64,000 nucleotides of DNA from Isurus oxyrinchus (GCA_026770705.1 JANJGN010000121.1:434001-498000), one strand, 5' to 3'; positions 1 to 63,159 are shown, numbered from the stretch's first letter. Numbers and translations are program-made. Notes: a model not told the origin generated them from the letters alone.

Positions 1-1070
1 GTGTTTCCCAGCTTTCCCAGCAACTCCACTTCCCAGTTTGCTATACAAGCTGTGAGTTCATCGGAATTCAATTATTTCTCAAACGGTAGATTTGATGTCA
101 TTTTATTGAAAACTTCCTCAGCGCCTCCCTGAAGGGTTTACACTCTCTGGGAAGCAGGAATAGGCTGGATGTTGGGGAGTTCATCTTTTCCCAGAGAGCA
201 GTGATCCTCGGGAATGTGCTGTCAGTGGGTGTGGTGGTTGCTGTTTCTCTGTCGCCTTCAAGAGGGATCTGGAGTGGTTACTGACTGGGGGAGAGATCAT
301 GGAAGCGGAGAATGATACAGCACAGGAGGAGGCCATTCAGCCCATTGAGCCTGTGCCAGGTCTTTCAATGTTCTATCCCATCAGATCCACTAACCACCAC
401 TCCACTTTGCCCCCATCTTCCTCCTTCAAGTGTTTATCCAATTTCCCTTTTGAAAGTTCCTATTGAATCTGCTTCCACTGCCCTTTCAGGCAGAACCTTC
501 CAGATCACAACAACTCGCTCTGTCAAAACAAATTCTCCTCATCTCCCCCTCCGGTTCGTCAATCTGTGTCCCTCTGGTTACCGACCCTCCTGCCCCTTAA
601 ATACATCGATACTGTTCACCTCGACCACTCCCTGTGGGAGCGAGTTCCACATTCTCCCCTCTCTCTGGGTAAAGATTGGAACTGTTTATTAAGCGGGGGG
701 TGTAAGTCCATGGGGGAGTCCATCTCGATCTTGCCCGATTCGCACACGCGTCCGAGATGGATTTCTACCCTGCACTAAACGTTTCCAGAATTTTCTACAG
801 CACAATCCTGTACACAGCGATGGAGAGAAACATTGGACAGGGAGTCCAACAGCACAATGATCCATTCTCACCAATGTTCCACGCTAAGGGGAAAGTTCCG
901 ATTGTCCACTCTTAGAGTGTTTACAATGAAAACATTCATTCCACATTGAATCCCAGTGGATGGGTCAATATTACAGCAAATGTTGCAGTGATATGAAGCT
1001 TGATTGTTCAGCCAGAGTGAGAGATTGAAAGCGGAGAGTCAGTGATGATTTCTTTCTGTGTGTTCTCTAG

Positions 1071-1210
1071 ACAGTGGAGGAGAGATTCTGCACGTGATCC
1101 TGATCCTGGGAATACGAGCTGTGATATTCCTTGTGGCTGTGGTTATCACTATCGCTGGAGTCTGTGTCTGGGAGAGACAAACAGTGAAAGGAAGTCGACA
1201 GACTGTTTGA
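1071..1210 (+). CDS. Terminal transmembrane/short-tail exon of a receptor gene that starts upstream of the window (candidate activating Siglec-like receptor)
   Basis: Acceptor tttctgtgtgttctctag at 1053-1070. Phase-1 translation (x)SGGEILHVILILGIRAVIFLVAVVITIAGVCVWERQTVKGSRQTV* gives a hydrophobic segment with an internal Arg and a 12-aa Tyr-free tail. AATAAA at 2193-2198. The 3' flank is homologous to the 3' flanks of genes B and C. Confidence 0.75.
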
Positions 1211-1835: not shown

Positions 1836-2539
1836 AAGCTTATTCTTTCCATCAGCACAAACAGCAATTTCCAAGCGGACTCCCATCAGCAGACAGAGTG
1901 CAATGAAACATCGGCATGCCTGCTTCTTAATGTACGGAGAGAAACCTGGAACGAGAGATTCTCCTTCTTCTCCTCAGCAAGCTGAAACTTTTCCTTATAC
2001 CTGGTGCTCCCCAGTCCTGCTGTGTGGACACATCATAACCACGGCATTGTCTGGCTGTGTGCAGCCAACATGGTCGAATAGGAATGAACAGAAATGTGAC
2101 GTTGCTAAACTCTGTTCTCTGATTGGAATGTGCTTTCTGAATGCTGCACCTTTTTCATGCTGCGATAGATTGTAAGAAGCATTTGGGTTATGAATAAAAT
2201 TACATTGATTAACTCAAGTGATTAAAATGCTCAGCCTGTTCTGTAGATATTTAAAGATTAAAATTCTTATTTTGCTGCAAAATTCTTGGCTCAAAGACAT
2301 TACTTCATGTTGTCACGTTTTCCAATCAGATGAATTCCTCTGTCCATCTTTATAATAGAAATTTCCAATGTAAACATGTCACATTGTAGCTGCACACACT
2401 TGCCAGTGGGTGGTGTGATATCAAAGCTGTCTTGCTGCTGAGAAACAGCGAGAAATATTCCTGTTGTGTGCATGAACTTCATGTTAGCATGAGACACAGG
2501 CATCAGATGCAATTTTGTGCAATTTGTACAATGTTCTTT

Positions 2540-2930
2540 AGACAGCGCAGCACTCCCTCAGTACTGACCCTCCAACAGCGCAGCACTCCCTCAGTTCAGA
2601 CCCTCCTACAGTGCAGCACTCCTTCAGATCAGACCCTCCGACAATGCAGCACTCCCTCAGTTCAAACCCTCAGACAGTGCAGCACTCCCTCAGTTCAGAA
2701 CCTCCGACAGTGCAGCACTCTCTCAGTTCAAACCATCCGACAGTGCAGCACTCCCTCAGTTCAAACCCTCCGACAGTGCAGCTCTCCCTCAGTTCAAACC
2801 CTCCAACAGTGCAGCACTCCCTCAGCTCAGAGCCTCCGACAGTGCAGCACTCCCTCAGCTCAGACCCTCTGACAGTGCAGCACTCCCTCAGTACTGAACC
2901 TCCGACAGTGCTGCACTACCTCAGTACTTC
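2540..2930. repeat. 33-bp minisatellite (cagtgcagcactccctcagtactgaccctccga family)
   Basis: Direct tandem repeats. The same unit recurs at about 7200-7600, 9770-10015, 21490-21595, 23310-23530, 25785-26410 and 49335-49930. Confidence 0.95.
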
Positions 2931-4424
2931 TCCGCCGATGCTGCCAGACCTGCTGAGTTTTTCCAGGTATTTCTGTTTCTGTTTCTGTTTTGGATTTCCA
3001 GCATCTGCAGTTTTTTTGCTTTTAGTGCTGGGCAGTTCCTCAGCAAGGATTCGGGCCACAAAACATTGCGAGTGCTGTGGGTCTGCGCCACGATTTAGAG
3101 AGCTGTGCTTGGCATGCCTATTCTAGTCCCAGTCCAGTGTGGTGGGGACAGCCTGGCAGTCCTGGGTTGGTGGTGCCCAGCATGGTGTGCAGGACGTGGT
3201 CAGTCCCTCACACACGTCGGTCCTGGGGGTGGGTGGCTTGATACTAGGCCGCAGGTGGCACAATCCCAGTCAGGGGAGGCATCTGCAGCCTGTCAGTGGG
3301 GAGCAGGTAATATAGAGGGTAGGGGTGGGGGTGGGAATCGAGGGGGGCCGGTGGTCTCTGTAAGTCACAGTACAATGGGCCTCTAGTTGGAGAGAGGTCA
3401 GGTCTACATGGGGCATTGGGATGTCAACATCAGACAGTCTAGGGAGGAGGACTGGGATGTCAACCCCGAACACAATAAGATCAAGGATTAGAGAGGAAGG
3501 GAGGAGACTGATTGGAAGGAGGGGAATGTGCACATTATGCTCCTCCAGCACGATGGGAGGGACTGTGTTGGTTACGGGGGTTGGGGGGGGTGAAGTGGGA
3601 GGGGATAGAAGCTTACCTGGTGGTATTGCCTCAGCCTCACCCTTTTTCAAGCTGATCCAATGTCGCAGTTGAAGAATAAGCTACAAAACAAATTGGCAGG
3701 GGAGGTCTCCCAGGGCCTGTGGGAGACATCACCCACTGCATCTTCGGCCTGTTTGAAGGGGCACCCGAACAATTCCGGCTTTTCCAAATGATGAGGAAGA
3801 CACAGCTGCACCCCGAGTCCCCTACTGGGGATCCAGAAGGTTACAATAGTGCTGCGAGGGACTCATGGGCTCCACAGTGACTCCCTAATTAGCGACTGGA
3901 AGGTTTATGTTCATTTATCTTTATTATCCGTTCATATTGAGCAATGGAGCTCCTGATTTGTCACCTTTCTGTACCTCGTCCAATGCTTCTGTTATCAGGA
4001 CTTCCACATCGATGTGAAAGAGCCATGATGATAGCAGACAGTCGCACAATGGGAATGGCACTAGGCCAGTGATCCAGAGGCCCAGGTGAATGCTTTGAAG
4101 GCACGGGTTCAAATCCCACCACGGCAGCTGGAGGAATTTCAATTCGATTAATCAATAAATTTAATTGATTGATACATTTTTTTCTTATTCATTTCAGGGA
4201 TGTTGGTGTCACTGACTAGGCCAGTATTTGTTGCCCATCCCCAATTGCCTTTGAGAACATCTGGATATCTGAGTTAGGATCAGGAGTAGGTCACTCAGTC
4301 CCTCGAACCTGCTCAGCCATTCAGTAAGATCATGGCTGATCTGATTGTCACCTCAACCTCACATTCCTGCCTACCCCCAATGACCTTTCACCCCCTTGTT
4401 AATCAAGAATCTATCTAGCTCTGT

Positions 4425-5620
4425 GGAAGGGGAGCCAATCAATCGGGCTGCTTTGTCCTGGATGGTGTCGAGCTTCTTGAGTGTTGTTGGAGCTGCACTC
4501 ATCCAGGCATGTGGAGAGTATTCCATCACACTCCTGACTTGTGCGTTGTAGATGGTGGACAGGATTTGGGGAGTCAGGAGGTGAGTTACTGTCTGCAGGG
4601 TTCCCAGCCTCTGACCTGCTCTTGCAGCCACAGTGTTTATATGGCTGGTCCAGTTCAGTTTCTGCTCAATGGTAACTCCCAGGATGTTGATATTGGGGGA
4701 TTCATTGATGGTAATGCCATTGAATGTCAAGGGGCGATGGTTATGAATGGTCTGTGGAATATTCTGGTACAAAATTTCAACACTCGGACTCCAGATGCAA
4801 TATTCAAGTGGTTCCTTTATTAGGCATGTGGGGAGCAAACGCTGGGCAGTCCAGGCGCTTCTCCACCGAGGTTCAAATGAGCACAGTTTATATATTTTTA
4901 CTCTCAGTTACAAGGTAATGGTATTAGTTAGACAAAGGCCACAGCACAACGACCCTCCGGTGGGCTAATAATTGTGTTCTTGTACAGTAATTACAGGGCA
5001 GAGACTGGCTATTGTCCTTTTGAGACAGCAAAGAATCTATGTTTGTTCAATACAAAAGGTTTCCGGGGGCTGACTGGATGTGGTTCAAGGCCATCGGACG
5101 GTGTGAAATAACCTTCCCCATTTCTTGATTGAGTCACCCAGTGTCCTTGTGTGTGTGTCTCCCATTTCCTCATTGCAAATTTCCAACTGAGCCCTTTGTA
5201 CAGGTTTTTAAGTTTTCACGTAAGGATGTGTACGCTTTGGCGCCCTAGCTGCTGGTCCTGGCTGGCTCTTGAACATAAATCCAAATTTTCTGCATCTTCA
5301 ATTAGATTCTCTCTTGTTGGAGCTGGTCATTGCCTGGTACTTGTGTGGCATGAATGTTACTTGTCACCTGTCAGCCCAAACCTGGATGTTGTCCAGGTCT
5401 TGCTGCATTTGGACATAACTTGCTTCAGTATCTGAGGAGCCGTGAATGGTGCTGAACATTGTGCAAACATCAGCAAACATCCCCACTTCTGACCTTATGA
5501 TGGAAGGAAGGTCATTGATGAAGCAGTTGAAGATGTTTGAGCCTAGGACACTACCCTGAGTAACTCCTGCAGTGATGTCCTGGAACTGAGATGATTGACC
5601 CCCAATAATCACAACCATCG
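4425..5620 (-). mobile_element. CR1/L2-group LINE reverse-transcriptase fragment, split by a solo LTR
   Basis: ORFs 4371-4838 (LGVTIEQKLNWTSHIN...MEYSPHAW) and 5364-5618 (GVTQGSVLG...FINDL...MFADV). Confidence 0.85.
4744..5300 (-). mobile_element. Solo LTR, ERV-like
   Basis: 557 bp with TGAA...TTCA termini and a near-TSD (gtta/atta) interrupting the LINE. On the minus strand TATATAAA (~4887-4894) is followed by AATAAA (4817-4822). Confidence 0.7.
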
Positions 5621-6623
5621 TTGGTGTTGTTATGTAGTGGAACTAGAGAGGTTATAGCAGTTATGAGAACATTAAGCAAACAGCAGCAAGAATTGAACAC
5701 CTACGTTGTGGTTTATGAAAAGGTTTTCAACCTGGTCAACTGGTAAAATCTGTTGAAAGTGGGCTATCATGGCGTGTGCCCTTTGGGAGATATTTGTAAC
5801 AACGTTCTCGATGTCGGAACAGCTTGCATTGAACAAATCTGATCTTTACCCAGAACTTCAGAGGAAGGGGGGACAATTGTTCCCTGGTGTGGGGGGCATG
5901 GTGGGGGGGGGGGAGGGTGAGGGAGAGACAAGTAGCCTGAAATACCAAGCCAGACACTTTGTGAAGACAAAAGTTGTTTATTCATTTTTTTTCACAAATC
6001 ATAATCTTTACAATTAAAGTCCCGACAAGATAATGGTGAATCATGAACACATTGTCGGGGTGAATCTGTGCCCGGGAGCATAAAGCAGCAAAATCAGGGG
6101 CCCGCTTTACATCTCTCTGAATTTTAACTATCATTAACCCCAGTAACATCCATTCAAATGACTTAGTCATAAGATTCCTCACACATTCACTTGCACACTC
6201 ACACACCCACACCCACACAGACACACTGACACACTCACTCATTCACATTGACACACACATATTGACAGTCACACACACACACACACACACACGCTCATAA
6301 AGACAGACACAAACACAGTCACGTGAGGTGAATAGTGTCGATGTATTTAAGGGGAAGCTGGATAAACACACGAGGGAGAAATGAATAGAAGGATATGGTG
6401 ATGGGGTGAGATGGAGAAGGGGTGGGCGGAGACTCGTGTGGAGCAGAAACTCCAGCATGGAACAGATGGGCCGAATGGCTTCTTTCCCTGCTGTAAAACG
6501 CAGGTAAAGTTTCAGTTGGAATTAATGAACAGGGCCTGTGTGAAATAGATTGCTAAGCAGTAGATAAGGAGGGGAGAGGCTGTGGCATGGTGCAGGATGA
6601 CCTTGCGTGAATGAGGCCAGGGT

Positions 6624-6740
6624 CTAATATCTACAGCAGAGACCACAAGTCTCATTTGGTTCTCTCCAATTACAGCAGTTACAGCAGAATCTGCAGAGCT
6701 GCTGTCTGCCCATTCTCTTCTGGCGCTGCAGCAAGGAGCC
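6624..6740 (-). CDS. HAMP: Hepcidin-like gene exon 3: furin site plus 8-Cys mature peptide
   Basis: Acceptor ctcctgcttttccag. Phase-0 translation GSLLQRQKR-MGRQQLCRFCCNCCNWREPNETCGLCCRY*. The C-x2-CC-x-CC-xn-CG-x-CC pattern after R-x-K-R is the hepcidin signature. Confidence 0.92.
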   Translation of the reverse strand, partial: GSLLQRQKRMGRQQLCRFCCNCCNWREPNETCGLCCRY

Positions 6741-7880
6741 CTGGAAAAGCAGGAGGACAATAGGTGAGAACATTCCGGAAAGAAAGAAGGCATCATTTCA
6801 ATCAGGCGCGTCATTGGAAGGAGGATGGCGCATTTCTATAGCGCCTTTCCCCTCCTCAGGATGGCCCAAAGTGTTCCACAGCTGAAGGAAGGACTTTTTC
6901 TGAAGTGGGCTCACCGCTGTAATGTAGGAAACGCAGCAGGCAATTCACGCACAGCAAGATCCCACAAACAGAAATGTGATAATGGCCCCGATTTTCAAAT
7001 TTTTACCAATGTCAGTTGAGGGATAAATGTTTGCCCCAGGAAAGCGGACATAACTGCATCCCATCCACCCCCCACCACCCCCTCCACACATACCCCCAAC
7101 TCCTGACGCACTTCATTTAAATTGTGGCCATGGAATCCTCTACATCCATCTGAGAGGGCAGATGTTGTCTCAGTTTAACATCTCATCTGAAAGACAGCGC
7201 CTTCAACAGTGCAGCACCCCCTCAGTACTGACCCTCCGACTGTGCAGCACTCCCTCAGTACTGACCGTCTGACAATGCAGCACCCCCTCAGTACTGACCC
7301 TCCGACTGTGCAGTCCCCCGCCGGTACTGACCCTCTGACAGTGCAGCACTCCCTCAGTACTGACCCTCTGACAGTGCAGCACCCCCTCAGTACTGACCCT
7401 CCGACTGTGCAGCACTCCCTCAGTACTGACCGTCTGACAATGCAGCACCCCCTCAGTACTGACCCTCCGACTGTGCAGTCCCCCGCCGGTACCGACCCTC
7501 TGACAATGCAGCACTCCAAGACTGACCGTCTGACAATGCAGCACCCCCTCAGTACTGACCCTCCGACTGTCCTGCCCCCCCGCCGGTACTGACCCTCCGA
7601 CAGCTCGGTAATTTCTCAATTACGCCTGGTGGTCCTTTTAACTCAGAGCTGAGAGTTGCAGAGAATCGAGCAGACACCCTGAACTGACACTTGCAGTGCA
7701 AGTACTGGGAGTGCGCTGGTCATTATCATGCTGCTGTCTGTGGGATCTTACAGTGCGCCAATGGCTGATTCTTTTCCCACAGTACATCAGTGACCTCACA
7801 TGAAAGAAAAAAAGCACTTGATTGTCTGCGAAACAGTTTGGGACGTCCTGATGTGTTGGAAGGCGCTAGAGAAATGCAAG

Positions 7881-8029
7881 AGTTGACGTTTCGAGTCCTC
7901 ATGACCCTTCTGAGGACTCGAAACGTCAACTCTTTTCTTCTCCGCCAATGCTGCCAGACCTGCTGAGTTTTTTCAGGTAATTCTGTTTTTGTTTTGGATT
8001 TCCAGCATCCGCAGTTTTCTTTGTTTTTA
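7881..8029 (+). mobile_element. Penelope-like terminal fragment with inverted 5' end and 14-bp TSD, in hepcidin intron 2
   Basis: tagagaaatgcaag is duplicated at 7867-7880 and 8030-8043. Perfect 24-bp inverted arms at 7878-7901/7911-7934. The body resembles the 3' end of the GIY-YIG element near 56540-56600. Confidence 0.7.
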
Positions 8030-9302
8030 TAGAGAAATGCAAGTCCTCTTTGTCTTTCACTCGATCCTCTAAGGTGTCTGTTGATTAACCAGCCTCTCGG
8101 TGTTTGATGTAGGCCTGGTTATAAACAGTTAGAAGGATCAAATATCAAAAGTGCTTTGGCTGACAGTCAAACCGATTGTGCATTCGGAGAGATTAGATAC
8201 GGTCTGCGCACAATGACTCCAGTCTCTGGCACTGACTGCCGCCTGGGGTCTCCCTTCCACATAACACTCACAACCTGCATTTACACAGCGCCTCTGACAT
8301 TGCAAAATGTCCCAGCCCACATTACCGGAGCGTAAATCAGAGAGAAGTCTAACACTGAGTCACATATGGAGATATTAGGGATAGGTGACCAAAAGCTTGG
8401 TCAAAGATGTCAGTTTTTAAGGAGCGTCTTAAAGGAGAGAGAGAGAGAGAGGCAGAGAGGTTAAGGGAGGGTATTCCGGAGCTCAGGGCCCCAGGCAGCT
8501 GAAGGCACGGCCACCAATGGTGGAGCGATGGGAATCAGGGGGACCCGGGAGATGCAGTAATGTCAGAGATTTTGGAGGAACATCGGGACCAGAGGAGGTG
8601 TTCTCCTGCTCCATATCTCTCTCTCTCTTCCTCTCATCCACTCCTCCTCTCCCTGTCTCTCTCTCCTACTCTTCCTCTCAATTGCCCTCTCTCCCAATCT
8701 TTCTCTCCTCTCTCCCTTTTCCTGTCTCTCTCCCTCTCTCTCTCCCTGTCTCCTTCTCCCACTCTGTATCTCTCCCTCTCTCTCACACTATTTTTGTAAC
8801 TTTCGCTCACTCTGTAACTCTCCCTTCCCTGTTAATTTCTCTCTCTTGGACAATCTCTCTTCCCTTTTCACTTTCCCTCACTCTGCATCTCTTTAATTTC
8901 TCCCTCTGTCACTCTCTCCCACCTATGTTCTTTCCCTTTCACCCCTCCCCGTCCCACTCTCTGTCTCTCTCTTCCAATCCCTCCCTCCCCCATTCCATCC
9001 CTCTCTCCGACTCTCGACTCCCAGCCTCTCTTTAACCCACTCCCAGGCTGGATCAGTCTCCCTCTCACTATTCCCGGCGTGGGTTACATTTAAAATTCCT
9101 GTGGGGATATGTTCACTTCCTTGGAATTGCCTCTTCCCAGCTTTGCAAAAAAAGTTGGGGGGGGCGGGGGGCTCGATTTCAAACCTGCCTCCTGAGTATA
9201 ACCGAGACAGACTGCCACTGAAATCAGCTTGAAATCAGAAAACTTTCTGTGGAAGAAACGAGCAGGGAGAAACCTTAAAATAAGGAATGAATTTCCACCT
9301 AC

Positions 9303-9359
9303 CGTGTCCGGGGAATCCACAGATTTCTCAATCGTCGAAGAACCTAAAGCAGTGTCAAC
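9303..9359 (-). CDS. HAMP: Hepcidin-like gene exon 2 (acidic pro-region)
   Basis: 57 nt, phase 0-0, acceptor ttctttctttttgcag, donor ACG|gtaggt. Encodes VDTALGSSTIEKSVDSPDT, in frame with exon 3. Confidence 0.8.
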
Positions 9360-10079
9360 CTGCAAAAAGAAAGAATTTATCAGGGAGAAAGTGAGAGGAG
9401 GATTGAGGGAGAGGGAGAGAGAGAGAGAGAGAGGTACAGGAGAGAGAGGGGGAGGAAGACAGACTTGCATTTCTCTAACGCCTTTCACCACATCCCAAAG
9501 CATTTCACAGCCACTGAAGGATGTTTTTGAAGTGCACTCACACTGTAGGAAATGTGGCAGCTGATTTGTGCACAGCAAGATCCCACAAATAGCAATGTGA
9601 TCATGGCCTAGATCATCTGTTTTTGGTGATGTTGGGTGAGGGATAAATATTGGTCCCAGGACACCGGGGAGAACTCCCCCTGCTCTTCCTCCAAATAGTG
9701 GCTGTGGGATCTTTCACACCCGCCCGAGAGGGCAGACGGGGGACTCGGTTTAATGTCTCATTCAACATTGTTGCGCTCCCTCAGTACTAACCCTTTGACA
9801 CTGCAGCACTCGCTTAGTATTAACCCTTCGATAGTGCTGCGCTCCCTCAGTACTGTCCCTCCGTCAGTGCAGCTCTATTTCAGTTCTAACCCTTCGACAC
9901 AGCAGCACTCCCTCAGTACTGACCTCCGACAGTATAGCACTCCCTCAGTACTGTCCCTCCAATAGTGCAACACTTCCACACTACTGACCCTCTGAGAGTG
10001 CAGCACTCCCTCAGCACGGAGCGTTGATCTACATTATGGGACTGAATTCCCTGGAGTGAGACTCAGACCAGTGATTTAG

Positions 10080-10970
10080 GTAGGGTTGTGGGGGCTGGAG
10101 GAGGTTACAGAGATAGGGAGGGCTGTAGAGGCTGTAGGAGCTTACAGAGAAAGGGAGGGTTGTAAGGGCTGTAGGAAGTTACAGAGATAGGGAGGGTTGT
10201 AGAGGCCGTAGGAGGTTACAGAGATGGGGGAGTTGTGGGGGCTGGAGGAGGTTACAGAGGTAGGGAGGTTTGTTGGGGCTGTAGGAGGTTAAAGAGATGG
10301 GGTGGTTGTGGGGGCTGGAGGAGGTTACAGATGTAGGGATGGTTGTAGAGGCTGGAGGAGGTTACCAAAATAGACACTGCTGTAGGGGCCACAGTAGGTT
10401 ACAGAGATAGGGAGAGTTATAGTGTGGAGAGGAGGTTTTCGAGTTCAGGAGGATTATAGGGGCTGGATGAGGTTACAGTGATTGTGAGGGTTGTGGGGCC
10501 TGGAGGATTTTACAGAGATAGGGAGGGTTGTAGGGTCTGGAGCAGGTTACAGAGATAGGGAGGGTTGTAGGGTCTGGAGCAGGTTACAGAGATAGGGAGG
10601 GTTGTAGGGTCTGGAGGAGGTTACAGTGATCGTGAGGGTTGTGGGGCCTGGGGGAGGTTACAGAGTTAGGGAGTGTTGTGGGGACTGTAGGAGGTTACAT
10701 AGATAGGGAGGGTTGTCGGGTCTGGAGGAGGTTACAGAGATAGGGAGGGTTAAAGGGACTGAAGGAGGTTACAGAGATAGGGAGGGTTGTAGAGACAGTA
10801 GGATGTTACAGAGATAGGGATTGTTGTAGGGGCTGGAGGATGTTACAGAGATAGGGAGGGTTGTAGGGGCTGGAGGAGGTTACAAAGATAGGGAGGGGTG
10901 TAGGAGCTGGAGGAGGTTACAGAGATAGGGAGGGTTGTAAGGCCTGGTGGAGGTTACAGAGATAGGGAGT
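10080..10970. repeat. 35-bp minisatellite (ggaggaggttacagagatagggagggttgtaggggct)
   Basis: Direct tandem repeats. Reverse-complement arrays at about 13630-13865, 50055-51390 and 55210-55400. Confidence 0.95.
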
Positions 10971-11146
10971 CGCTGAGGAGGGATTGAAAACAAGAATGAG
11001 AATTTCAGGGGAAATGACAGAAGGAAATGATGTTAAATTCTTAGAGGGCGACAATATTAAAGGCACGAACATAATAATATCAAACTGCGGAAGAGACCAG
11101 TCTATCTGGGTGGTAGACGTAGAGTCATGTGCAAGAAACACCTCAC

Positions 11147-11263
11147 CCAGAGGGACATCTCTTAGCTTAACCTCGACAAGGAGAAGAAGTGACTCAGCTG
11201 CAGGGAGAGCAGCAAAGTCAGAGTGAACAAGACAAGTCGCCATTTCATCTGGGAGCTTCCCAT
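11147..11263 (-). CDS. HAMP: Hepcidin-like gene exon 1 (signal peptide), with a lesion as assembled
   Basis: MGSSQMKWRLVLFTLTLLLSLQLSHFFSLSRLS*EMSLW|gtgagg. Hydrophobic signal peptide ~70 bp downstream of a TATA box. In-frame TAA at 11164-11162 precedes the phase-0 donor; alternatively AGG|TTAAGC at 11170 is a dead GTAAG donor. Confidence 0.75.
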
Positions 11264-11332
11264 CTCTGCCTGTCTCTTCTGATCTTCTGGCTCTGCTTTG
11301 ATGCTTTGGTTTGTAACTAGAGGAGCTTCCTG

Positions 11333-11546
11333 CTCTTATACCTGAAACACTTGAAGGGGACAGCCGCGGGTGGGTAGCTGTGTGGTATCACACCCATTTC
11401 TGGATATTGCAGTGTCGATGTTCCCTGTCCCACTGGCCTGGGACCAGCAGTAAGGTCACTGGGACATTGACTGTCTGGCGCCGAGAACTATCAGTCCCTC
11501 CGCAACGCCCTTCACCTTGTGCAAATATGTGTTCATATTGATGCAA
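11333..11546 (-). promoter_or_regulatory. Hepcidin-like promoter: TATA box, BMP-responsive element, C/EBP-type sites
   Basis: TATAAGAG at 11340-11333. GGCGCC at 11477-11482 abuts a Smad element (minus strand TCGGCGCCAGAC). TTGTGCAA at ~11517-11524 and TGATGCAA at ~11540-11547. Only a degenerate STAT-like TATCCAGAA at ~11398-11406. Confidence 0.6.
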
Positions 11547-11939
11547 CACAACATAGCAAAAACATAGGGGCTGGTTCTTATGTCGGCAAATCAGGTGAAG
11601 CGCACGCCCCCTAACCCCTTACTCCTCTCATTGCTCCTCCTTCCTGCCAGACACTTACTATTTTACAAATTGTGTGCGTTGCTTTTATTTCGGACAAGGG
11701 GCCTCGAGGGGGAACTGATTTACGCTGAGGTTTAGGGGTTAACAGCCATGTCATGTGTTGATCGGTCAGTGTTTACCATGTGGAGACTGTCTGTCACCAG
11801 CTTTGTTAATGGTTTATCCAGGAACATTGAAGGGCATGAACGTTCTTGCTTTGTATGGAACAAGTTACCAACTGGGTTCAGTCATCGACTCAGACTCACA
11901 TCAACATAAACTGGCTTCTGACAGGTAAGTTTCTATTAC

Positions 11940-12530
11940 ATAAGGGTAGGAGGAGGCCATTTGGCCCCTCGAGCCTGCTCCACCATTCAAAGAGTTCATG
12001 GCTGATCTGCAAACTAGCCCCATATGCCTTTGTCCCATCTCCTTTAATACCTTTGGATAACAAAAATCTATCAGTCTCACAGGTTTAAAATGAACAACTT
12101 GATCGTGCATCAGTTCCTGTTTGGGGAAGAGAGTTCCAAATTTCTCCCACCCTTTGTACTTCCTAATTTAATTCCTTTTTAGGCTCTGACCCCGAGTCCC
12201 AGACTCCCCCCAACCAGGGGAAATGGTTTCTCTTTATCGCCCCCGATCTGTTCCCCTTAATATCATGCGAACATTCATCAAATCTCCTGCTTAACATTCT
12301 AACTTCCAGGGAATACAAGCCGAGTTTGTGTTTAATCTCTCCTTGTGATTTAACCCTTGGAGTCCCGGTCTCATTCTGGTAAACTGACACTGCTCTCCCT
12401 CCGAGGTCAATATATCCTTCCTAAGGTGTGGGGCCCAGAATGTCTCACAGTGACTCCAGGTGTGGTCTAGCCAGGGCTTTATGTAGACTGAAGCATGACC
12501 TCTGCCCCCTTATATTCTAATCCGTGAGAT
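11940..12530 (-). mobile_element. CR1-type LINE 3' fragment
   Basis: Degenerate LGLYSLEVR and GLEYKGAEVMLQ motifs plus a CR1-like 3' tail. Confidence 0.75.
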
Positions 12531-14119: not shown

Positions 14120-14620
14120 GGGGCTGAATGGCCTCCTCCTGTTCCTGTGTAATGGGCTTCAGTGGCTGAATGGGCCTCGTCCTTTTTCTGTGTAACAGGC
14201 TCAATAGGGCTGAATGGGCCTCCTCCTGTTCTTGTGTAACAGGCTCGAGGGGGCTGAATGGGCCTCCTCCAGTTCCTGTGTAACAGGCTTGAGGAGCTAA
14301 ATGGGCCTCCTTCCGTTCCTGTGTAACAGACATCAGTGGCTGAATGGGCTTGCTCCTGTTCCTGTGTAACAGTCTTGAGGGGGCTGAATGGCCTCTTCCT
14401 GTATCTGTGTAATAGGCTCAATGGGCTGAATGGCCCCCTTCTGTTCCTGTGTAACAGTCTCGAGGGGGCTGAATGGGCCTCTTCCTGTTCCTGTGTAACA
14501 GGCTCGAGGGGGCTGAATGGGCCTCTTCCTGTTCCTGTGTAACAGTCTCGAGGGGGCTGAATGGGCCTCTTCCTGTTCCTGTGTAACAGGCTCGATGGGC
14601 TGAATGGCCTCCTTCTGCTC
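14120..14620. repeat. ~43-bp minisatellite (gggggctgaatgggcctcttcctgttcctgtgtaacaggctcga), derived from a LINE/SINE tail
   Basis: Direct tandem repeats. Confidence 0.9.
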
Positions 14621-14874
14621 TGTAAAATTGTTGTGATACTGTAACTGCCTCTTTGGTTTCATTCAGCTGAATCTTCAGCTCTTCAGTCTCTTCCTTGTAT
14701 CTCTTGCCTTCCTCCTGGAACATTGGACATGGTTGGGTCTTCCCTGCCAACTGTTTCTTCAGTTTGCTCAGAGCGGCACAGAATTCGCTTTCTTTCTCTT
14801 CAGGATTTTCCAGTGGAACCAACTCTGACCTGAGGGACACTTGCAGCCTGTGAGGATGCTTCAATTCTTCAAAC

Positions 14875-15980
14875 TCATTCCGAGATACACTCTCATATTC
14901 CCCCAGCAACTCAGCAACTCCTCCAGTGAAACATTTCAGAGCAGCTGAGCTTGGTTTTCTGGAACCAGTCTCGGCCCAGAAGACTAGGGCCCTCACCTGT
15001 CGCTATGATCACTGGAAGCTGGGCTGTCTGCTGCCTGTAGGACACAGGTACTGGGATGAGGTCCTTTCCCTGTATGGATTCTCCAGTGTGTGTCTTCAGC
15101 TGATCCATTGTTGGCTCTAAATTCAGCGTCTGGGTTCCTTCATTTAGCTGTTTAAATGTGGGCTCTTCCACCACTGTGTCTGAGGCTCCCGTATCTGCCC
15201 CATTACTAGTGGCTGCCCATTCACTTGGGTTGTGATGGTTATAGGTTCAGTTTTTACCACTGTGACATTGGACAGGGAATAGACATCGGTATCAGCAGCT
15301 TCAGGCTCTGTGATATTATTCACTTCCATCATGTTGGTGCACTGTCTGATGGGCTGTCTCGATTTCACCCTGCATTGCTTTATTACCCGCCCCTTTGTTG
15401 TGGCAGTGATGGCATTCTGCTCCCTTGAACCTGCAGGTGTCCGGTACGAGCTCACTCCCCCCCACATCGAGAACAGACCAACTTCGGAGTTGCTGCTGAA
15501 ATACTCCCACGAAACCTTTTAGTTTCTGGAGCGGCAGAGACTGTCTCTCGCTTGGCGGCTGTCTCTCTCTCTCTCTCTCCAGTTTGAGCCTCACGCCCGG
15601 TGGTTGTTTCCTGTCCCAGCTGAGGACTGGTGCCATGTTGTACATCCTGTAAATCCCGCCAGTCTCTCCCAGCACTTTCCATGCCTGGCGCTATTTCCAT
15701 GGTGCACTTCAAATCGATGTCGTCTTCTGCAAGTAAACGGCTCTGAATGGCGTTGGGGTGAACGACACAAACCAATCGGCCCCGCAACATGTCATTGAGT
15801 GTGTCTCCGAGGTCCCAGTGCTCAGTCACCTGCTTCCACTTCACTGTATAGGTTGCGATGGACTCACCCGGGGCCCTTACTCTGGAGTTAAACTTAAACC
15901 TCTGCATTATTACCCACGGCTTCAGCTGAAAACACATCTTCATGAGGACGACTAATTGGTGAAAAGATTTAGAATTGGGT
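14875..15980 (-). mobile_element. Ty3/Gypsy LTR-retrotransposon internal fragment (gag, zinc knuckle, protease), frameshifted, no LTRs visible
   Basis: QRFKFNSRVRAPGESIATY...LNDMLRGRLVC (gag), CHHCHNKG (knuckle), DTGAS at 15195-15181 (protease), GPSLLGRDW. Confidence 0.9.
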
Positions 15981-17149
15981 GTAATACACGTCACTGTCTT
16001 CAGCTCTGAGACTGTCAATCCTCACCAAACAATTCTTCCCTTCCAAGTTCCCAATTATTTTAGCACGTCCCACGAATGTGGCCACCCCATAATTGGCATC
16101 TTTGGTGTATGTGATGGTATATTTCCATCTATACCAATATTTATACCAAGCTCCGTGCAGTGCTGTGTAAGAGTGGGAAGGAAAGTCAAAGCTACACGGA
16201 ATAACCACACAAGAGCTGCTGATGGCCCTCCGAGGCAGCGCCTTCATAGACCGTCCCTCTGACGTCACTCCTGAAAGGCAACGAGGGAGGGGACTGAACA
16301 TCAAAAAGCAGAATATTACTTCAATGGAGAGAGGCAGCAGAATGCGGTACAGAGGGATCTGGGTGTCCTTGTACATTAATCACAGAAAGTCAGCATTCAG
16401 GAACAGCACAGAATGAGGAAGGCAAGTGGAATGTTGGCCTTTATTGCAAAGGGCTGGAGTATAAAAGGAGGGAAGTCTTGCAACAGCTGCACAGGGCGTT
16501 GGTGAGATTGTATCAGGAGCAGTGTGTACAGTTCTGGTCTCCTTACTTAGGGAGGGATAGACTCTGCATTGGAGGCAGCTCAGAGGAGGTTCACTGGGCT
16601 GATTCCTGGGATGAAGGGGGTTTGTCTTATGAGGAAATGTTGAGCAGGTTGGGCCCTGTATCCATTGGAGTTTAGAAGAATGAGAGGTGATCTTATTGAA
16701 ACATATAAGATTCTGAGGTGGTGGGGGGTTTGACAGGGTGGATGCTGAGGGGATGTTACCCCTTGTGGGGGAATCCTGTGAAGCAATAAGGATGTTTTAC
16801 TGCATTAAAGGGCTATATAAATGCACTGTCATTCCTATTGAAACAAGCTCTCTGATGCACAAACAGAAAATGCTGGAAAAACTCAGCAGGTCTGACAGCA
16901 TCTGTGGAGAGAGAAACAGAGTTGTTGTTTCGAGTCCGTATGAGGCTTTTGCTTTTGCTAAATTCTCTGACTCGCTATTCGCTCACTCTCTGTGTGATCA
17001 CTAACCCTGTTCTCTAAAATTAAATGTTCACTTCCTCATTCCAGGAAAGAATCCAATTCCCTGAGTTCCGATCAGTAATGAATTTGTACCTTGCAGCAAG
17101 CTGATGAAGATCAATATCAGACCGACCTCTCCCATCTTCAGTTCCTCAT
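15981..17149 (-). pseudogene. Gene A: MAG/Siglec-like gene remnant (leader exon plus truncated V-set exon)
   Basis: Leader CDS 17135-17090 MGEVGLILIFISLLQ-G|gtac (acceptor at 17150). The V exon from 16270 reads GVTSEGRSMKALPRRAISSSCVVIPCSFDFP...HGAWY...FVGRAKIIGNLEGKNCLVRIDSLRAEDSDVYY, then runs into Gypsy gag and stops. No downstream C2 or TM exons found. Confidence 0.85.
16345..16775 (+). mobile_element. CR1-type LINE fragment
   Basis: QLHRALVRLYQEQCVQFWSPYL motif. A similar fragment lies at 63160-63980. Confidence 0.85.
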
Positions 17150-22786: not shown

Positions 22787-23569
22787 ATGCACACTCACAC
22801 ATGCACACATACCCTCAAACACACACTCTTTTGCACAAACACTTTCTCTTTCACACACACACATACACACACACACTCTCTCTCTCACACACATGTTCTC
22901 TCTCACTCCCTCTCTCAAACGCACAATCTCCCTTTCTCTCAATCTCACACACACACTATCACATACACAAATACTCTCTCACAGACACACACTCTCTTTT
23001 GCACGCAAACTATCTCACACATACATTCTCTCTCTATCTTTCTCTCTCACACGTATACTGTCTCTCACTCTCACATAGACATTCTCTTTCTCTCACACAC
23101 TCTCTCACACACACAAGCTACCTCCCTCTCTCATGCACACACACTCTAACTCTCTTTTGCTCTCTCACACATACACACTCAGTCTCTCACACATACATTG
23201 TCTCTCTCTCTCTCACACAAACGCACTCTCTCTCTTCGAGATGGAAGGTTGGTGTTTTGAGACCATGTCAAGGTTTCAGCTCAAAATGCGGACGGACTCT
23301 CCCCAGTAAGGGAGTGCTGAGGGAGTGCTGCACTGTTGGAAGGTCAGTACTGAGGGAGTGCTGCACTGTCGGAGGGTCAGTACTGAGGGAGTGCTGCACT
23401 CCCAGAGGGTCAGTACTGAGGGAGTGCTGCACTCCCAGAGGGTCAATGCTGAACGAATGCCACACTGTCAAAGGGTCAGTGCTGAGCGAGTGCTGCACTG
23501 TTGGAGGGTGAGCGTTGAGGAAGTGCTGCACTGTCACTGTCACTGACCATCCGACAGTGCACTGTCACC

Positions 23570-25601: not shown

Positions 25602-26620
25602 CTACAGAGAAATGGAAACAGAAGACATCCTCACATCATTTACTGGCACTGATAGGGTTAAATTATTGTGCAGCCTCATTAGTGTCAGTCGTGTCTCAGT
25701 GGGTTTAAGCCTTTTTTCACTCTCTTTCTCTGTCTCTCTTTCTCTCTCGCTTTCTCTCTCTCTTTATAATTTAATCTCTATCACACTCCAACAGTGCAGC
25801 ACTCCCTCAATACTGACCCTCTGACAGTGCAGCACTCCCTCAATACTGACCCTCTGACAGTGCAGCACTCCCTCAATACTGACCCTCCGACAATGCAGTA
25901 CTCCCTCAGTACTGACTCTCTGACAGTGCAGCACTCCCTCAGTACTGACCCTCCAACAGTGCAGCACTCCCTCAATACTGACCCTCTGACAGTGCAGCAC
26001 TCCCTCAATACTGACCCTCTGACAGTGCAGCACTCCCTCAGTACTGACCCTCTGACAGTGCAGCACTCCCTCACTACTGACCCTCCGACAGTGCAGCACT
26101 CCCTCAGTACTGACTCTCTGACAGTGCAGCACTCCCTCAGTACTGACCCGCTGACAGTGCAGCACTTCCTCAGTACTGATCATCCGACAGTGCAGCACTC
26201 CCTCAGTACTGACCCTCCGACAGTGCAGCACTCCCTCAGTAATGACACTCTGACAGTGCACAACTCCCTCAGTACTGACCCTCCGACAGTGCAGCACTCC
26301 CTCAGTACTGACCCTCCGACAGTGCAGCACTCCCTCAGTACTGACACTCTGACATTGCAGCACTCCCTCAGTACTGACCCTCCGACAGTGTAGCACTCCC
26401 TCACTACTGACATCAGGTGCCTTGTCATTATTGTGTTCAGATTTCTGGTCAAAGAGCGAGTGATGGAGGGTGACAGCGGCTGGGAGCGAGAGACAGTGCT
26501 GACCACTGAGCCATTGCTTCACAGGGAGATATCTGTGTGTAACCCGGCTGGGAATCTGGGACACGTGTTGTCTACACACTGAGGTTGAAGCTTTGAAGTG
26601 AGTGTAAACAGCTCCTGTAC

Positions 26621-28234: not shown

Positions 28235-28440
28235 ATTAAAAGGGTTGTTCAGGACAGTTAGAGAGAGAAAGGTCGTCAAGTACGGAGATTGGAAACGAAG
28301 ACCTGACAGCCTTGTCCTCACAACCATTGAAGGAGAAACTGAGAGCAAAAACAGAAAGGGAGAGGAAAAATTGGGTGTGTGGATAACGTGGACTGAGCGA
28401 GGATTGAAGAAAACTGGATTAAAAACAACACGATCCCAAT
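28235..28440 (+). mobile_element. RTE-clade LINE 3' remnant (paralogous copy at 56603-56880)
   Basis: RERKVVKYGDWKRRPDSLVLTTIEG. The longer copy begins MLRISWMDRKTNEW, typical of the RTE C-terminus. Confidence 0.7.
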
Positions 28441-28481
28441 GGCTCCACGGAGACAACAAACAAATGTATCTCCACACTCAC

Positions 28482-29453: not shown

Positions 29454-29492
<39 letters not shown>

Positions 29493-29518
29493 TGATGTTG
29501 AAGTTTGCAGTAACTCAC

Positions 29519-31776: not shown

Positions 31777-31833
<57 letters not shown>

Positions 31834-31876
31834 TGTGTGCGTGTGTGAGAGAGATGTTGAGTTGGCATTAACTCAC

Positions 31877-36851: not shown

Positions 36852-37327
36852 ACCAGAGGTTTGAGTTCACTGGCTTCTCATTTCCTCAGTGATCTGGGTG
36901 ATTTATCACCTTGTGGTTTGTTGGATCTTGCTGTGCACAAACTGCCTGCTGTGTTTAACATCTGTGACCACAATTCAGGAATAATTTCATTGGCTGTGAA
37001 GGGATTTGGATCCTCCTGAGGTGGTAAATTGCGCTGCAGAAATGCACATCTTTCTTTTATCGATACGTCAGACTTTTAAACAGGACAGGAGAGATTGATG
37101 GGAGTGGATAACCTGATAATACAGTTAATGCTTTTCATCATTGATATTAAAGTAATTATTAGAGGTTGCTTTAGGACTGAACTGGAAGCTATCAGCAGGT
37201 TATGGAGAATGAAGACAATGTGTTATAATAACCTGTGTTTTGTGTTAATATGTAAACGTCACAGTTTGTGTTATTTCCCATTGAGTGTTGAATGTGAATT
37301 GTTGAGTAATTATAACACAGCACTTAC

Positions 37328-37693
37328 CAGAAACGTGAAGCTGGGTTACAGGATAGTAGCTGTAACTATTCCTGCTGTCAAATTCTATTCTGAAAAAATA
37401 AGGTCCCGCATCTTCCCGTCTGATGTTATTTATAATCAGAGAACAGTCACCATCTTTCAGGTCTCCAGACAGCCGGGTCCGATGGTGGAACCGTGGTAAC
37501 TCGTGACTGTGATCCTTGGAGTGAAAGGCTATAGACGATGTTCTCCATTCCTCATTATTAAACCAGACTCCAACTCGTGGTTGGTTTTCCAAATGTGATG
37601 GATAACTGTAATGACAGGGAATCTGTACACAGGAACCTTCCTGCGCTGTCACCTCTCGTGGAGTGTCACCTTTCCACTCTTGTTACAGTCCAA
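37328..37693 (-). CDS. Gene B sialic-acid-binding V-set exon (premature stop near 5' end)
   Basis: VGL*QEWKGDTP...SCVQIPC...W...GDCSLIINNIRREDAGPYFFRIE. Siglec Cys pattern, no F-strand Cys, essential Arg in FRIE. Confidence 0.9.
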
Positions 37694-61914: not shown

Positions 61915-62726
61915 CTAACACACAGAGAATGGATCCTTTTAGAGAAATATAACATGAAGCATCAGTTCAAATAGAAAGCACAGTCCCACAAGAGAAAGCA
62001 CTTTTACAAGGATGATATCAGAACTGAGAGATTACAACGATCAGGAGAGAATTTCCTATTTTCAGACTTAGTGGAGTTTCTGTCTCTCAGATGAATTCAC
62101 TTCCACTTCGAGACAATTGAATTGACAATCCCGGGTGAGGGTGGGGGAGCAGCTCACAGTTCCTGACACACTGGCTTGTTACTTTCTCCGAAATCTGCCA
62201 GATTTAAATTCTATCCTGTTCCCAGCAGGAGAGAATCCATTTGAACCAATCACTGAACCGGCATCTAAAACAGATGATCAGGTTATTGATCACATTGCTG
62301 TTTGTGGGAGCTTCCTGTGAACAAATTGGCTGCTGTGTTTCCCATATTACAACAAGGGTTACATTTCAAGAATTATTTCAATGGTTGTGAATCCATGTGC
62401 AACGTACAGAGGTGGTGAAAGGCGCTATAGAAATACAAATCTTTCTTTTGCTCATATGTAAGAATTTTAAACAGGATTAGGGAGATTGATGTAAGTGGAT
62501 AACGTGATAACATTGATGGACACAGTCAATACATTTAATCACTGATATTAAAGTGAGTATTAGAGGTTGTTTTAGGACTGAACTGGAAGCTATCACCAGG
62601 TTATTGAGAATCAGACAGTGTGTTATAATAAACTGTGTTTGTGTTAATATGTAAATGTCACAGTTTGTGTTATTTCCCATTGAGTGTTGGATGTGAATTG
62701 TTGAGTAATTATAACACAGCACTTAC

Positions 62727-63095
62727 CAGAAACGTGAAGCTGGGTTACAGGGTAATAGTTATGGCTCGGACCATTGTCAAATTCTATTCTGAAAAAATAA
62801 GGTCCTGCATCTTCCCGTCTGATGTTGTTTATAATCAGGGAACAGTCGCCATCTTTCAGGTCTCCAGACAGCCGGGTCCGATGGTGGAACCGTGGTAACT
62901 CGTGACTGTGATCCTTGGAGTGAAAGACAATGGGAGCCCAGGGAATATGTTTCTCATTATGAAACCAGACTCCACCTCGCGGTTGGTTTTCCAGACACGA
63001 TGGATAACTGTAATGACATGGAATCTGTACACAGGAACCTTCCTGCGCTGTCACCTCTCGTGGAGTGTCACCTTTCCACTCTTGTGAGGGTTCAG
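62727..63095 (-). CDS. Gene C sialic-acid-binding V-set exon (intact); leader exon outside the window
   Basis: AEPSQEWKGDTP...SCVQIPC...GDCSL...DAGPYFFRIEFDNGPSHNYYPVTQLHVS|gtaagt. Confidence 0.93.
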
Positions 63096-63159
63096 CTGGG
63101 GAGAGAAATATCAATATTTAACTCTGAATGGTTTGTGGATCCAATAGACTTAAAATTTA

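What the first reader, a model, noticed from the sequence alone, without database searches (positions are those of the whole stretch)
6624..11340. Cryptic three-exon hepcidin-family gene embedded in a Siglec/MAG cluster
Seen: minus-strand exons 11263-11147 (signal peptide), 9359-9303 (acidic pro-piece) and 6740-6624 (RQKR plus 8-Cys peptide), with phase-0 introns and a TATA box. All three are too short for the ORF track. Established: hepcidin has this three-exon prepropeptide layout, and human HAMP lies next to MAG and CD22. Inference: this is a probable chondrichthyan hepcidin or hepcidin paralog. It sits downstream of three Siglec-like genes and tail-to-tail with a fourth receptor, so it may have been duplicated along with the receptor cluster. 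I cannot tell from here whether it has been described.
Basis: partly seen in the sequence, partly recalled or inferred. Interest (0 to 1): 0.92.

Follow-up and report, generated by a model that had tools for sequence, protein, structure and literature searches.

The report
Shark-type hepcidin gene, donor site broken
This is a real three-exon gene for a hepcidin-type small cysteine-rich defence and iron peptide, lying beside Siglec immune-receptor genes, but in this assembly one base at its first splice site is wrong, so this copy may be dead.

Summary
Exon 3 (6740-6624, minus strand) matches Pfam Hepcidin above the curated cut-off (31.6 bits against 27). It has an RQKR cleavage site and all eight cysteines.

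Spliced contigs in run X1 confirm the exon 2/exon 3 junction exactly (9303|6740, GT..AG).

The RNA form gives 31+19+38 = 88 codons in frame. In the window, however, intron 1 starts TT (11170-11169), not GT. No canonical in-frame donor exists, so this copy as assembled cannot make the peptide. Whether that is a real null copy or a base error remains open.

The mature peptide is "type 2"-like. It shares the core CRFCCNCC..PN..CG.CCR with sea bass hamp2, lacks the Q-S-H-L-S-L iron-regulatory N-terminus, and has an 8-residue loop. A sibling transcript in X1 reads RQKR|MSHLSICMYCC, which is type-1-like.

The neighbours are CD22-like Siglec exons, as next to human HAMP.

The scan has already noted several sibling hepcidin genes on other pieces of this genome. 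Verdict: a new member of a known family, of moderate interest.

The parts
11334..11340 (-). TATA box (TATAAGA), 77 nt upstream of the ATG
   Evidence: Read directly. X1 contig cover falls off in bin 11294-11450 (table 2), which fits a transcription start near 11310.
11171..11310 (-). Exon 1: a 5' UTR of about 47 nt (start approximate) plus CDS 11263-11171. The CDS is 31 codons and forms a signal peptide with a basic n-region and a 12-residue hydrophobic core.
   Evidence: Translation. The 3' end is set by the X1 joint 9359|11171 (9 contigs, table 5).
11169..11172 (-). Lesion at the exon 1 donor. The window reads AGG|TTAAGC where the RNA junction requires AGG|GT. It is either G>T at intron position +1 (11170) or the loss of one G from a GGG run.
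   Evidence: table 5 reports the joint ends as CT..AA on the plus strand, which is TT..AG on the minus strand. One search shows no canonical in-frame GT donor free of a stop. Donor 11172|11171 shifts the frame to a stop after 35 residues, and donor 11147|11146 includes the TAA.
9360..11170 (-). Intron 1 (1811 nt), mostly satellite: a 37-bp unit x24 at 10077-10969 and a 33-bp unit at 9776-10014
9303..9359 (-). Exon 2: 19 codons, acidic propiece, phase 0 at both ends
   Evidence: Both ends match X1 joints.
6741..9302 (-). Intron 2 (2562 nt, GT..AG), containing a 33-bp satellite at 7206-7603 and a TC-rich tract
   Evidence: table 5 (joint 6739/9302, cut +1, CT..AC on the plus strand, 9 contigs)
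6624..6740 (-). Exon 3 coding part: end of the propiece, RQKR convertase site, a 29-residue mature peptide with 8 Cys, and the stop codon
   Evidence: Pfam PF06446 Hepcidin scores 31.6 bits (cut-off 27), E 2e-7. It aligns to sea bass hepcidin 1S6W with all Cys matched.
5955..6623 (-). 3' UTR of about 670 nt (end approximate), with a (CA/TG)n tract at 6194-6317 and the poly(A) signal AATAAA at 5982-5977
   Evidence: X1 contigs lie over the whole stretch down to the 5900-6085 bin (table 2).
11472..11482 (-). GGCGCC followed by CAGACA, 219 nt upstream of the ATG. It resembles a BMP-responsive element next to a SMAD box. This is inferred only.
   Evidence: Motif scan. A 6-mer like this is expected by chance about once per 4 kb, so the support is weak.
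37248..37652 (-). Neighbour: first Ig (V-set) exon of a CD22-like Siglec gene, with the YFFRIEF sialic-acid arginine motif
   Evidence: Pfam Ig_CD22 45.5 bits and V-set 44.1 bits; translation
62647..63114 (-). Neighbour: first Ig (V-set) exon of a second CD22-like Siglec gene
   Evidence: Pfam V-set 45.3 bits and Ig_CD22 38.8 bits
15972..16376 (-). Neighbour: weak V-set exon of the nearest upstream Ig receptor gene. It lacks the Siglec arginine motif.
   Evidence: Pfam V-set 20 bits, below the cut-off; translation

Best explanation
The locus is a hepcidin-family gene with three exons on the minus strand. Exon 1 encodes a signal peptide, exon 2 an acidic propiece, and exon 3 the RQKR convertase site plus a 29-residue, eight-cysteine mature peptide.

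In a closely related animal or gene copy (run X1) exactly this exon set is spliced in frame into an 88-codon message of about 1 kb. The contigs over the exons are far deeper than those over the introns.

The peptide belongs to the 'type 2' sort of hepcidin. It has the CRFCCNCC..PN..CG.CCR core of sea bass hamp2 and lacks the N-terminal Q-S-H-L-S-L / DTHFPI motif that type 1 hepcidins use for ferroportin. Its hairpin loop is 8 residues instead of 4-5 and carries an N-E-T sequon. I infer that it acts mainly as a secreted, disulfide-locked cationic host-defence peptide, released from its propiece by a furin-type convertase. A sibling gene (RQKR|MSHLSIC...) would serve as the iron hormone.

In this assembly the copy carries a single-base lesion at the exon 1 donor (TT instead of GT). 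I take this to be real rather than a base-call error, which makes this copy a null allele or a very young pseudogene in a multi-copy family. The rest of the gene is untouched.

Shown: family membership, exon junctions, the lesion in the assembled sequence, and the CD22-like neighbours. Inferred: the antimicrobial role, that the lesion is real, and the division of labour with the sibling.
For: - **Family.** Pfam Hepcidin matches exon 3 alone above the gathering score. All 8 Cys and the core align with PDB 1S6W, sea bass hepcidin. The hamp1/hamp2 peptides and the type 1 motif are quoted in PMC8502971.
- **Junctions.** Spliced contigs in X1 show joints 6740|9303 (GT..AG, 9 contigs) and 9359|11171 (9 contigs). 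Two variant joints keep the same frame (tables 5 and 5c).
- **RNA signature.** X1 exon bins are 100-500 times deeper than intron bins (table 2).
- **Lesion.** The window has no canonical in-frame donor, and the two available GT donors lead to early stops.
- **Sibling.** An X1 loose end at 6711 translates to RQKR|MSHLSICMYCC (table 7).
- **Intact remainder.** The TATA box, Kozak context, acceptors and AATAAA are all intact.
- **Neighbours.** Neighbouring V-set exons hit Ig_CD22.
- **Lesion more likely real.** In a multi-copy family a real disabling mutation is a priori commoner than an assembly error landing on one of two critical bases. An ancestral AGG|GTAAGC (a substitution) would be a far stronger donor than AGG|GTTAAG (a deletion), and substitutions are the rarer kind of assembly error.
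Against: - X1 is not the animal or copy in the window. Its intron contigs differ by about 1.4% (25 differences in about 1840 nt, table 8). So X1 shows what an intact version does, not what this copy does.
- No read-level DNA evidence for base 11170 was obtained. Unspliced X1 contigs across 11170 were not among the rows shown.
- The lesion is the only defect, which an assembly error would also explain.
- Contig depths are not a proper measure of expression, and the tissue is unknown.
- No antimicrobial or ferroportin assay exists for this peptide. L6 and F9 of the mature peptide occupy the positions of human I6 and F9, so some ferroportin activity is not excluded.
- The large protein searches found no close relative, so conservation across species was not shown.
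Confidence: 0.55

Rival explanations
1. The gene is intact and functional in the animal. The T at 11170, or the missing G, is an assembly or base-call error, or a rare allele of the sequenced individual.
For: Everything else in the gene is intact: promoter, ATG context, exons 2 and 3, both acceptors, the second donor and the poly(A) signal. X1 contigs matching the window's exons and 3' UTR almost letter for letter are spliced in frame. A minority of X1 depth carries the window's own letters at 6099 (about 2%) and at 9304 (the junction with ACG has depth 2475, against 13927 for ATG). So a window-like copy appears to be transcribed and correctly spliced at exon 2/3 (tables 3 and 5). The window has two N gaps, so the assembly is not flawless.
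Against: An error hitting exactly the donor dinucleotide is improbable a priori, at about 1e-5 per base for modern assemblies. If the ancestral donor was GTAAGC, the change is a substitution, which is the rarer kind of assembly error. Organism-B runs X5, X7 and X8 show little or no cover of these exons. The one X5 exon 1 contig differs at 4 of 90 letters, so it comes from a sibling (table 8).
Confidence: 0.33
2. This copy is spliced as it stands through a non-canonical TT..AG (or GT..CA) intron and yields the in-frame message.
For: The X1 joint maps to 11171|9359 with ends TT..AG in window coordinates. No differing letter at 11170 appears among the rows shown for X1 (tables 3-5).
Against: From established knowledge of spliceosomal introns, position +1 G is almost invariant and G>T there abolishes use of the site. 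There is no U12-type donor consensus. Tables 3 and 4 were truncated, and X1 differs from the window in its introns, so its donor sequence is simply unknown.
Confidence: 0.03
3. The peptide is the animal's iron-regulatory hormone (a ferroportin ligand), not mainly an antimicrobial paralog.
For: It lies at the HAMP-type position next to CD22-like Siglecs. X1 contigs over it are very deep, as expected of liver hepcidin. A GGCGCC plus CAGACA motif sits upstream. Hydrophobic residues stand at mature positions 6 and 9.
Against: The N-terminus MGRQQL lacks the Q-S/I-H-L/I-S/A-L motif (PMC8502971) and the H3/F4 equivalents of human hepcidin. A sibling transcript with MSHLSIC is a much better candidate for that role. 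The core is identical to sea bass hamp2.
Confidence: 0.2
4. It is a chance cysteine-rich ORF or another peptide family (LEAP-2, defensin), not hepcidin.
For: Only 38 residues carry the signal. The PDB match alone has E 0.26, and the large-database searches gave nothing.
Against: The Pfam Hepcidin score is above the curated cut-off. The full 8-Cys register, the RQKR site, the three-exon layout confirmed by spliced contigs, and a single occurrence in six frames of 64 kb all point to hepcidin.
Confidence: 0.01

Closest known systems
Teleost type 2 hepcidin (hamp2), e.g. sea bass hamp2 / PDB 1S6W
   Same: Both share an identical CRFCCNCC core, a P-N in the loop with an N-x-S/T sequon at the same aligned place, and a CG.CCR[FY] C-terminus. 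Both lack the iron-regulatory N-terminal motif. Both belong to a family with several copies that differ in the mature peptide (scan notes).
   Different: The loop between Cys5 and Cys6 is 8 residues (NWREPNET) against 5. The mature peptide is 29 residues against 26 for sea bass hamp2. The host is apparently a cartilaginous fish, whereas hamp2 is described in ray-finned fishes. Orthology against convergence was not tested. In the window the first donor is broken.
Human HAMP (hepcidin-25) and teleost type 1 hepcidin (hamp1)
   Same: Both have the three-exon prepropeptide gene, the furin-type RX(K/R)R site, eight cysteines, and a position beside CD22/MAG-type Siglec genes. The human gene order is from my own knowledge. 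PMC4453067 confirms only the HAMP-USF2-FFAR linkage.
   Different: The N-terminus is MGRQQL instead of DTHFPI or QSHLSL, so ferroportin binding is doubtful. The loop is longer.
Hepcidin expansions in Larimichthys crocea and other perciforms (PMC6240063, PMC3325200)
   Same: These are tandem or multi-copy hepcidin genes whose mature peptides diversify while the pre-pro parts stay alike. The X1 sibling shares the propiece sequence up to RQKR-M and then diverges completely.
   Different: This is a different vertebrate class. Here the copies are reported (in unchecked scan notes) to sit inside Siglec clusters.
Nurse shark plasma hepcidin (PMC9207270)
   Same: It shows that elasmobranchs make and secrete hepcidin, and that genome annotations can miss it: no ortholog was found in the whale shark protein set.
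   Different: No sequence was available in the held text or supplement, so the relation to this peptide is unknown.

Membership tests
Hepcidin (Pfam PF06446) | Profile match above the curated gathering score | tested here: met
   Exon 3 alone scores 31.6 bits against a cut-off of 27, E 2e-7, covering profile positions 24-52 of 53.
Hepcidin (Pfam PF06446) | Eight cysteines in the register C-x2-CC-x-CC-x(n)-C-G-x-CC | tested here: met
   All eight are present and aligned to 1S6W. The x(n) loop is 8 residues instead of 4-5.
Hepcidin (Pfam PF06446) | RX(K/R)R proprotein-convertase site directly before the mature peptide | tested here: met
   RQKR lies 29 residues before the stop.
Hepcidin (Pfam PF06446) | Three-exon gene: signal peptide, then propiece, then cleavage site plus mature peptide, spliced in frame | tested here: inconclusive
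   The feature is met in the RNA contigs of X1 (joints 11171|9359 and 9303|6740). In the window's own DNA, intron 1 starts TT and no canonical in-frame donor exists.
Hepcidin (Pfam PF06446) | Beta-hairpin fold locked by four disulfides | tested here: inconclusive
   The single-sequence AlphaFold2 model gave two helices at pLDDT 71 and pTM 0.38. That is not informative for a disulfide-rich peptide without an alignment.
Hepcidin (Pfam PF06446) | Position next to MAG/CD22-type Siglec genes and USF2, as for human HAMP | tested here: inconclusive
   CD22-like first-Ig exons lie at 37248-37652 and 62647-63114. USF2, LSR and a definite MAG were not found in the window.
Type 1 (iron-regulatory) hepcidin | N-terminal Q-S/I-H-L/I-S/A-L (fish) or DTHFPI (human) motif at the start of the mature peptide | tested here: not met
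   The mature peptide starts MGRQQL. The motif definition comes from PMC8502971. A sibling transcript in X1 does carry MSHLSI.
Type 2 (antimicrobial) hepcidin | Lacks the iron-regulatory motif, keeps the 8-Cys core, and occurs in several diversified copies | tested here: met
   The motif is absent and the core is identical to sea bass hamp2. The presence of several copies rests on one X1 loose end and variant joints and on unchecked scan notes.
Type 2 (antimicrobial) hepcidin | Common descent with teleost hamp2 (orthology) | not tested
   No hepcidin sequences from other species were returned by the searches, so no tree could be built.
Type 2 (antimicrobial) hepcidin | Antibacterial activity; induction by infection | not testable with these tools
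   This needs the peptide and assays. The tissues and treatments of the runs are coded.

The most novel reading that the evidence does not exclude
Elasmobranchs evolved their own diversified, type-2-like hepcidin subfamily, with a long sequon-bearing loop and no ferroportin motif. It sits next to a type-1-like iron hormone and arose by repeated duplication together with the Siglec cluster. The split into hormone and antimicrobial forms, so far described in ray-finned fishes, would then be either much older or convergent. The window would hold one freshly inactivated member of this birth-and-death family.
Probability: 0.35. Interest if true: 0.6.

Novelty: new member of a known kind. Interest (0 to 1): 0.42.

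Why it matters
Hepcidin is the master iron hormone of vertebrates and also an antimicrobial peptide. Its history before bony fishes is poorly documented. In the paper library searched here, the only direct mention for elasmobranchs is a plasma proteome hit, and the gene is easily missed by annotation because its exons are tiny and its introns are full of satellites.

A curated gene model shows that the HAMP-Siglec neighbourhood goes back to the root of jawed vertebrates. It also gives a concrete pair of peptides, MGRQQL... and MSHLSIC..., with which to test when the hormone and defence roles separated. For this particular copy the practical message is a caution: as assembled it cannot be spliced in frame.

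Tried and rejected
- **The search for homologous proteins.** I searched the 57-residue uninterrupted frame around exon 3, scoring residues 18-57. No candidate shared three words. This says little, because the words are short and Cys-rich.
- **The search of protein representatives.** With exon 3 as query, the only hit was a 577-aa repeat protein (P0001) with no hepcidin features, which I rejected as spurious.
- **ESM Atlas.** The best score was 0.76, to an unnamed plant cluster, so it gave no lead.
- **AlphaFold2 on exon 3 alone.** The model was helical and of low confidence. I did not use it and ran no fold search.
- **Rfam on 5000-12500.** Nothing found.
- **Second copy in the window.** A search for a second hepcidin exon, or any duplicate of the promoter or exons, found none; only (CA)n matches turned up.
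- **Nurse shark supplement.** It does not mention hepcidin.
- **Alternative start ATG 11243.** With donor 11172 this start reads in frame into exons 2-3. I rejected it because it lies behind two upstream ATGs, the first in good context, and gives no signal peptide.
- **Joined model.** The 88-codon spliced model was not sent to any search or folding tool, and exons were searched apart by reference. In one search pieces of the window were joined inside a script only to read the frame after each possible donor.
- **Taxon.** The taxon of the genome could not be checked because organism names are coded.


Full report
**What is in the sequence**

On the minus strand, 6740-6624 translates without interruption into the end of a propiece, the convertase site RQKR, a 29-residue peptide with eight cysteines, and a stop. 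Stretch 9359-9303 gives a 19-residue acidic piece. An ATG at 11263 opens a typical signal peptide, with a TATA box 77 nt upstream.

As written, the three-exon, phase-0 model does not translate.

**Family**

Exon 3 alone matches Pfam Hepcidin (PF06446) at 31.6 bits, above the curated cut-off of 27, with E 2e-7.

Against solved structures the only hit is sea bass hepcidin 1S6W. The E-value is weak (0.26) because the sequences are short and Cys-rich. The alignment is nevertheless clear: CRFCCNCC is identical, P-N is matched in the loop, CG.CCR is matched at the end, and all eight cysteines are in register.

The full cysteine pattern occurs once in the six frames of the 64 kb window. I regard family membership as settled.

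**Transcript evidence**

One sequencing run of a related sample (X1, organism A) lies over the whole locus. Its contigs over the three exons and a 3' UTR of about 670 nt are 100-500 times deeper than those over the introns (table 2). The tool warns that contig depth is a poor measure. I use it only to say that this run behaves like RNA.

More important are the joined contigs.

- Nine contigs join 6740 to 9303, with GT..AG ends on the minus strand.
- Nine contigs join 9359 to 11171.
- Two variant joints differ by one letter each. One is a silent change in the last exon 1 codon; the other changes V to G at the first exon 2 codon. Both keep the same register (tables 5 and 5c).

Read that way, exon 1 has 31 codons (11263-11171), exon 2 has 19 and exon 3 has 38. 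That is 88 codons in frame. The poly(A) signal AATAAA is at 5982-5977. Both introns consist largely of 33-bp and 37-bp satellites, which is why the gene looks buried.

**The lesion**

In window coordinates the intron implied by the 11171|9359 junction starts TT (11170-11169) and ends AG (joint ends CT..AA on the plus strand). Shifting by the one ambiguous letter gives GT..CA, which is no better.

A list of every GT after the ATG shows no canonical donor that is both in frame and free of a stop. Donor 11172|11171 (AG|GTTAAG) shifts the frame to a stop after 35 residues.

So the window differs by one base from what the RNA requires. There are two candidate changes:

- G>T at intron position +1, with an ancestral AGG|GTAAGC, which is a strong donor.
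- Loss of one G from GGG, with an ancestral AGG|GTTAAG, which is a weak donor.

I favour the substitution, on splice-site strength.

X1 is not the window's animal or copy. Its intron contigs differ at 25 of about 1840 letters (table 8), and it differs at 6099 and, in its major form, at 9304. X1 therefore shows that an intact version exists and is spliced as modelled. It does not show that this copy is.

Runs of organism B (X5, X7, X8) barely cover the exons. The one X5 exon 1 contig differs at 4 of 90 letters, so it comes from a sibling gene.

I could not read the base in raw DNA. My estimates are: real lesion (null allele or young pseudogene) about 0.55-0.6, assembly or base-call error about 0.33, and non-canonical splicing about 0.03.

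**What kind of hepcidin**

PMC8502971 gives the sea bass peptides and the rule. Type 1 hepcidins carry Q-S/I-H-L/I-S/A-L at the N-terminus and act on iron. Type 2 hepcidins lack it, are diverse, and are mainly antimicrobial.

The window's peptide starts MGRQQL and shares its whole core with sea bass hamp2. Its loop between the fifth and sixth cysteine is 8 residues (NWREPNET) instead of 4-5, and it holds an N-E-T sequon where hamp2 has N-M-S.

A loose end of an X1 contig follows the window up to RQKR-M and then continues as SHLSICMYCC (table 7; translated). So the same sample expresses a sibling with a type-1-like start and the same propiece.

My best reading is a division of labour. The sibling is the candidate ferroportin ligand. 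The window's type is a secreted, furin-processed, disulfide-locked host-defence peptide. This is inference by analogy; nothing here tests activity.

**Surroundings**

Upstream on the same strand lie three Ig-receptor genes. Two of their first exons hit Pfam Ig_CD22 (45.5 and 38.8 bits) and carry the Siglec YFFRIEF arginine motif. The nearest one is a weak V-set exon without that arginine.

Downstream, a plus-strand ORF ending at 1210 encodes a transmembrane segment with an arginine and a short tail.

That human HAMP lies beside MAG and CD22 is my own knowledge. The library paper I read confirms only HAMP-USF2-FFAR (PMC4453067). USF2 and LSR were not seen in the window. There is no second hepcidin copy in the window.

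**Prior knowledge**

In the paper library, hepcidin combined with cartilaginous-fish terms gave essentially one relevant paper. Hepcidin was detected in nurse shark plasma and had no ortholog in the whale shark protein set (PMC9207270). Its supplement holds no sequence.

Multi-copy, positively selected type 2 hepcidins are well described in teleosts (PMC3325200, PMC6240063).

The scan itself has noted several further 'hidden three-exon hepcidin' genes on other pieces of this genome. Some were said to sit in Siglec clusters and to differ mainly in the mature peptide. These are unchecked notes. The X1 sibling and the variant joints are my only independent support for several copies.

**Searches that gave nothing, and limits**

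The large protein searches found no relative. For a 38-residue Cys-rich query that is not evidence of novelty. The single-sequence structure model was uninformative. The spliced 88-codon model was not submitted to any search or fold tool, and exons were searched apart by reference. The genome's taxon could not be verified.

**Verdict**

This is a genuine hepcidin-family gene with a corrected gene model. It is of the type-2-like sort, sits in a conserved Siglec neighbourhood, and carries a one-base defect at the first donor in this assembly. It is a new member of a known family. Interest is moderate, and would be higher if the shark-specific expansion and the type 1/type 2 split are borne out genome-wide.

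Noticed in passing
window 6711 (loose end of an X1 contig, table 7): A transcript in run X1 shares the propiece up to RQKR-M with this gene. It then reads SHLSICMYCC, a type-1-like (iron-regulatory) hepcidin start. Its gene is not in this window.
   Followed up: partly
window 28318-35961, minus strand: Eight tandem, nearly identical Ig (I-set/Ig_3) exons of one Siglec gene, each followed by a (CA/TG)n tract that reads as HTHTHT in translation. A ninth similar exon lies at 56665-57177 in the next gene.
   Followed up: partly
window 37245-37652 and 62644-63114 against 15969-16376, minus strand: Two V-set exons carry the Siglec sialic-acid arginine motif YFFRIEF. The V-set exon nearest the hepcidin gene has YYTQF instead and scores below the Pfam cut-off. 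It may be a non-lectin or decayed member.
   Followed up: no
window 1058-1210, plus strand: An ORF with a hydrophobic segment containing an arginine (…ILILGIRAVIFLV…), a short tail without tyrosine motifs, and a stop. It looks like the last exon of an activating-type receptor converging on the hepcidin gene.
   Followed up: partly
window 7206-7603 and 9776-10014; similar coding-like repeats at 2432-3126, 23268-23543, 25764-26579 and 49056-49931: A 33-bp satellite that translates as ...PTVQHSLSTD... is scattered through the window, including both hepcidin introns. A separate 37-bp satellite (24 copies) fills 10077-10969.
   Followed up: partly
window 11472-11482, minus strand: GGCGCC immediately followed by CAGACA, about 140 nt upstream of the TATA box. 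It resembles the BMP-responsive element plus SMAD box of mammalian HAMP promoters. It could be chance.
   Followed up: partly
window 5955-11310 against X1 contigs (tables 3 and 8): X1 differs from the window at about 1.4% of intron letters, but at only about 2 of about 990 exon and UTR letters (6099 and 9304). This includes a 670-nt 3' UTR that holds a repeat insertion. The contrast is unexplained; gene conversion among copies or a mixture of copies in the contigs are possibilities.
   Followed up: no
window 6505 (loose end of an X1 contig, 255 letters): A variant 3' UTR in X1 leaves the window's sequence exactly where a dispersed-repeat-like element begins (…gccattcggcccat…). This suggests a sibling or allele without that insertion.
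   Followed up: no
window 14418-16018, minus strand: Gag-like retroelement ORFs lie directly beside the V-set exon at 15969-16376. LINE reverse-transcriptase fragments are at 1461-1796, 4371-4838 and 23656-24150.
   Followed up: no
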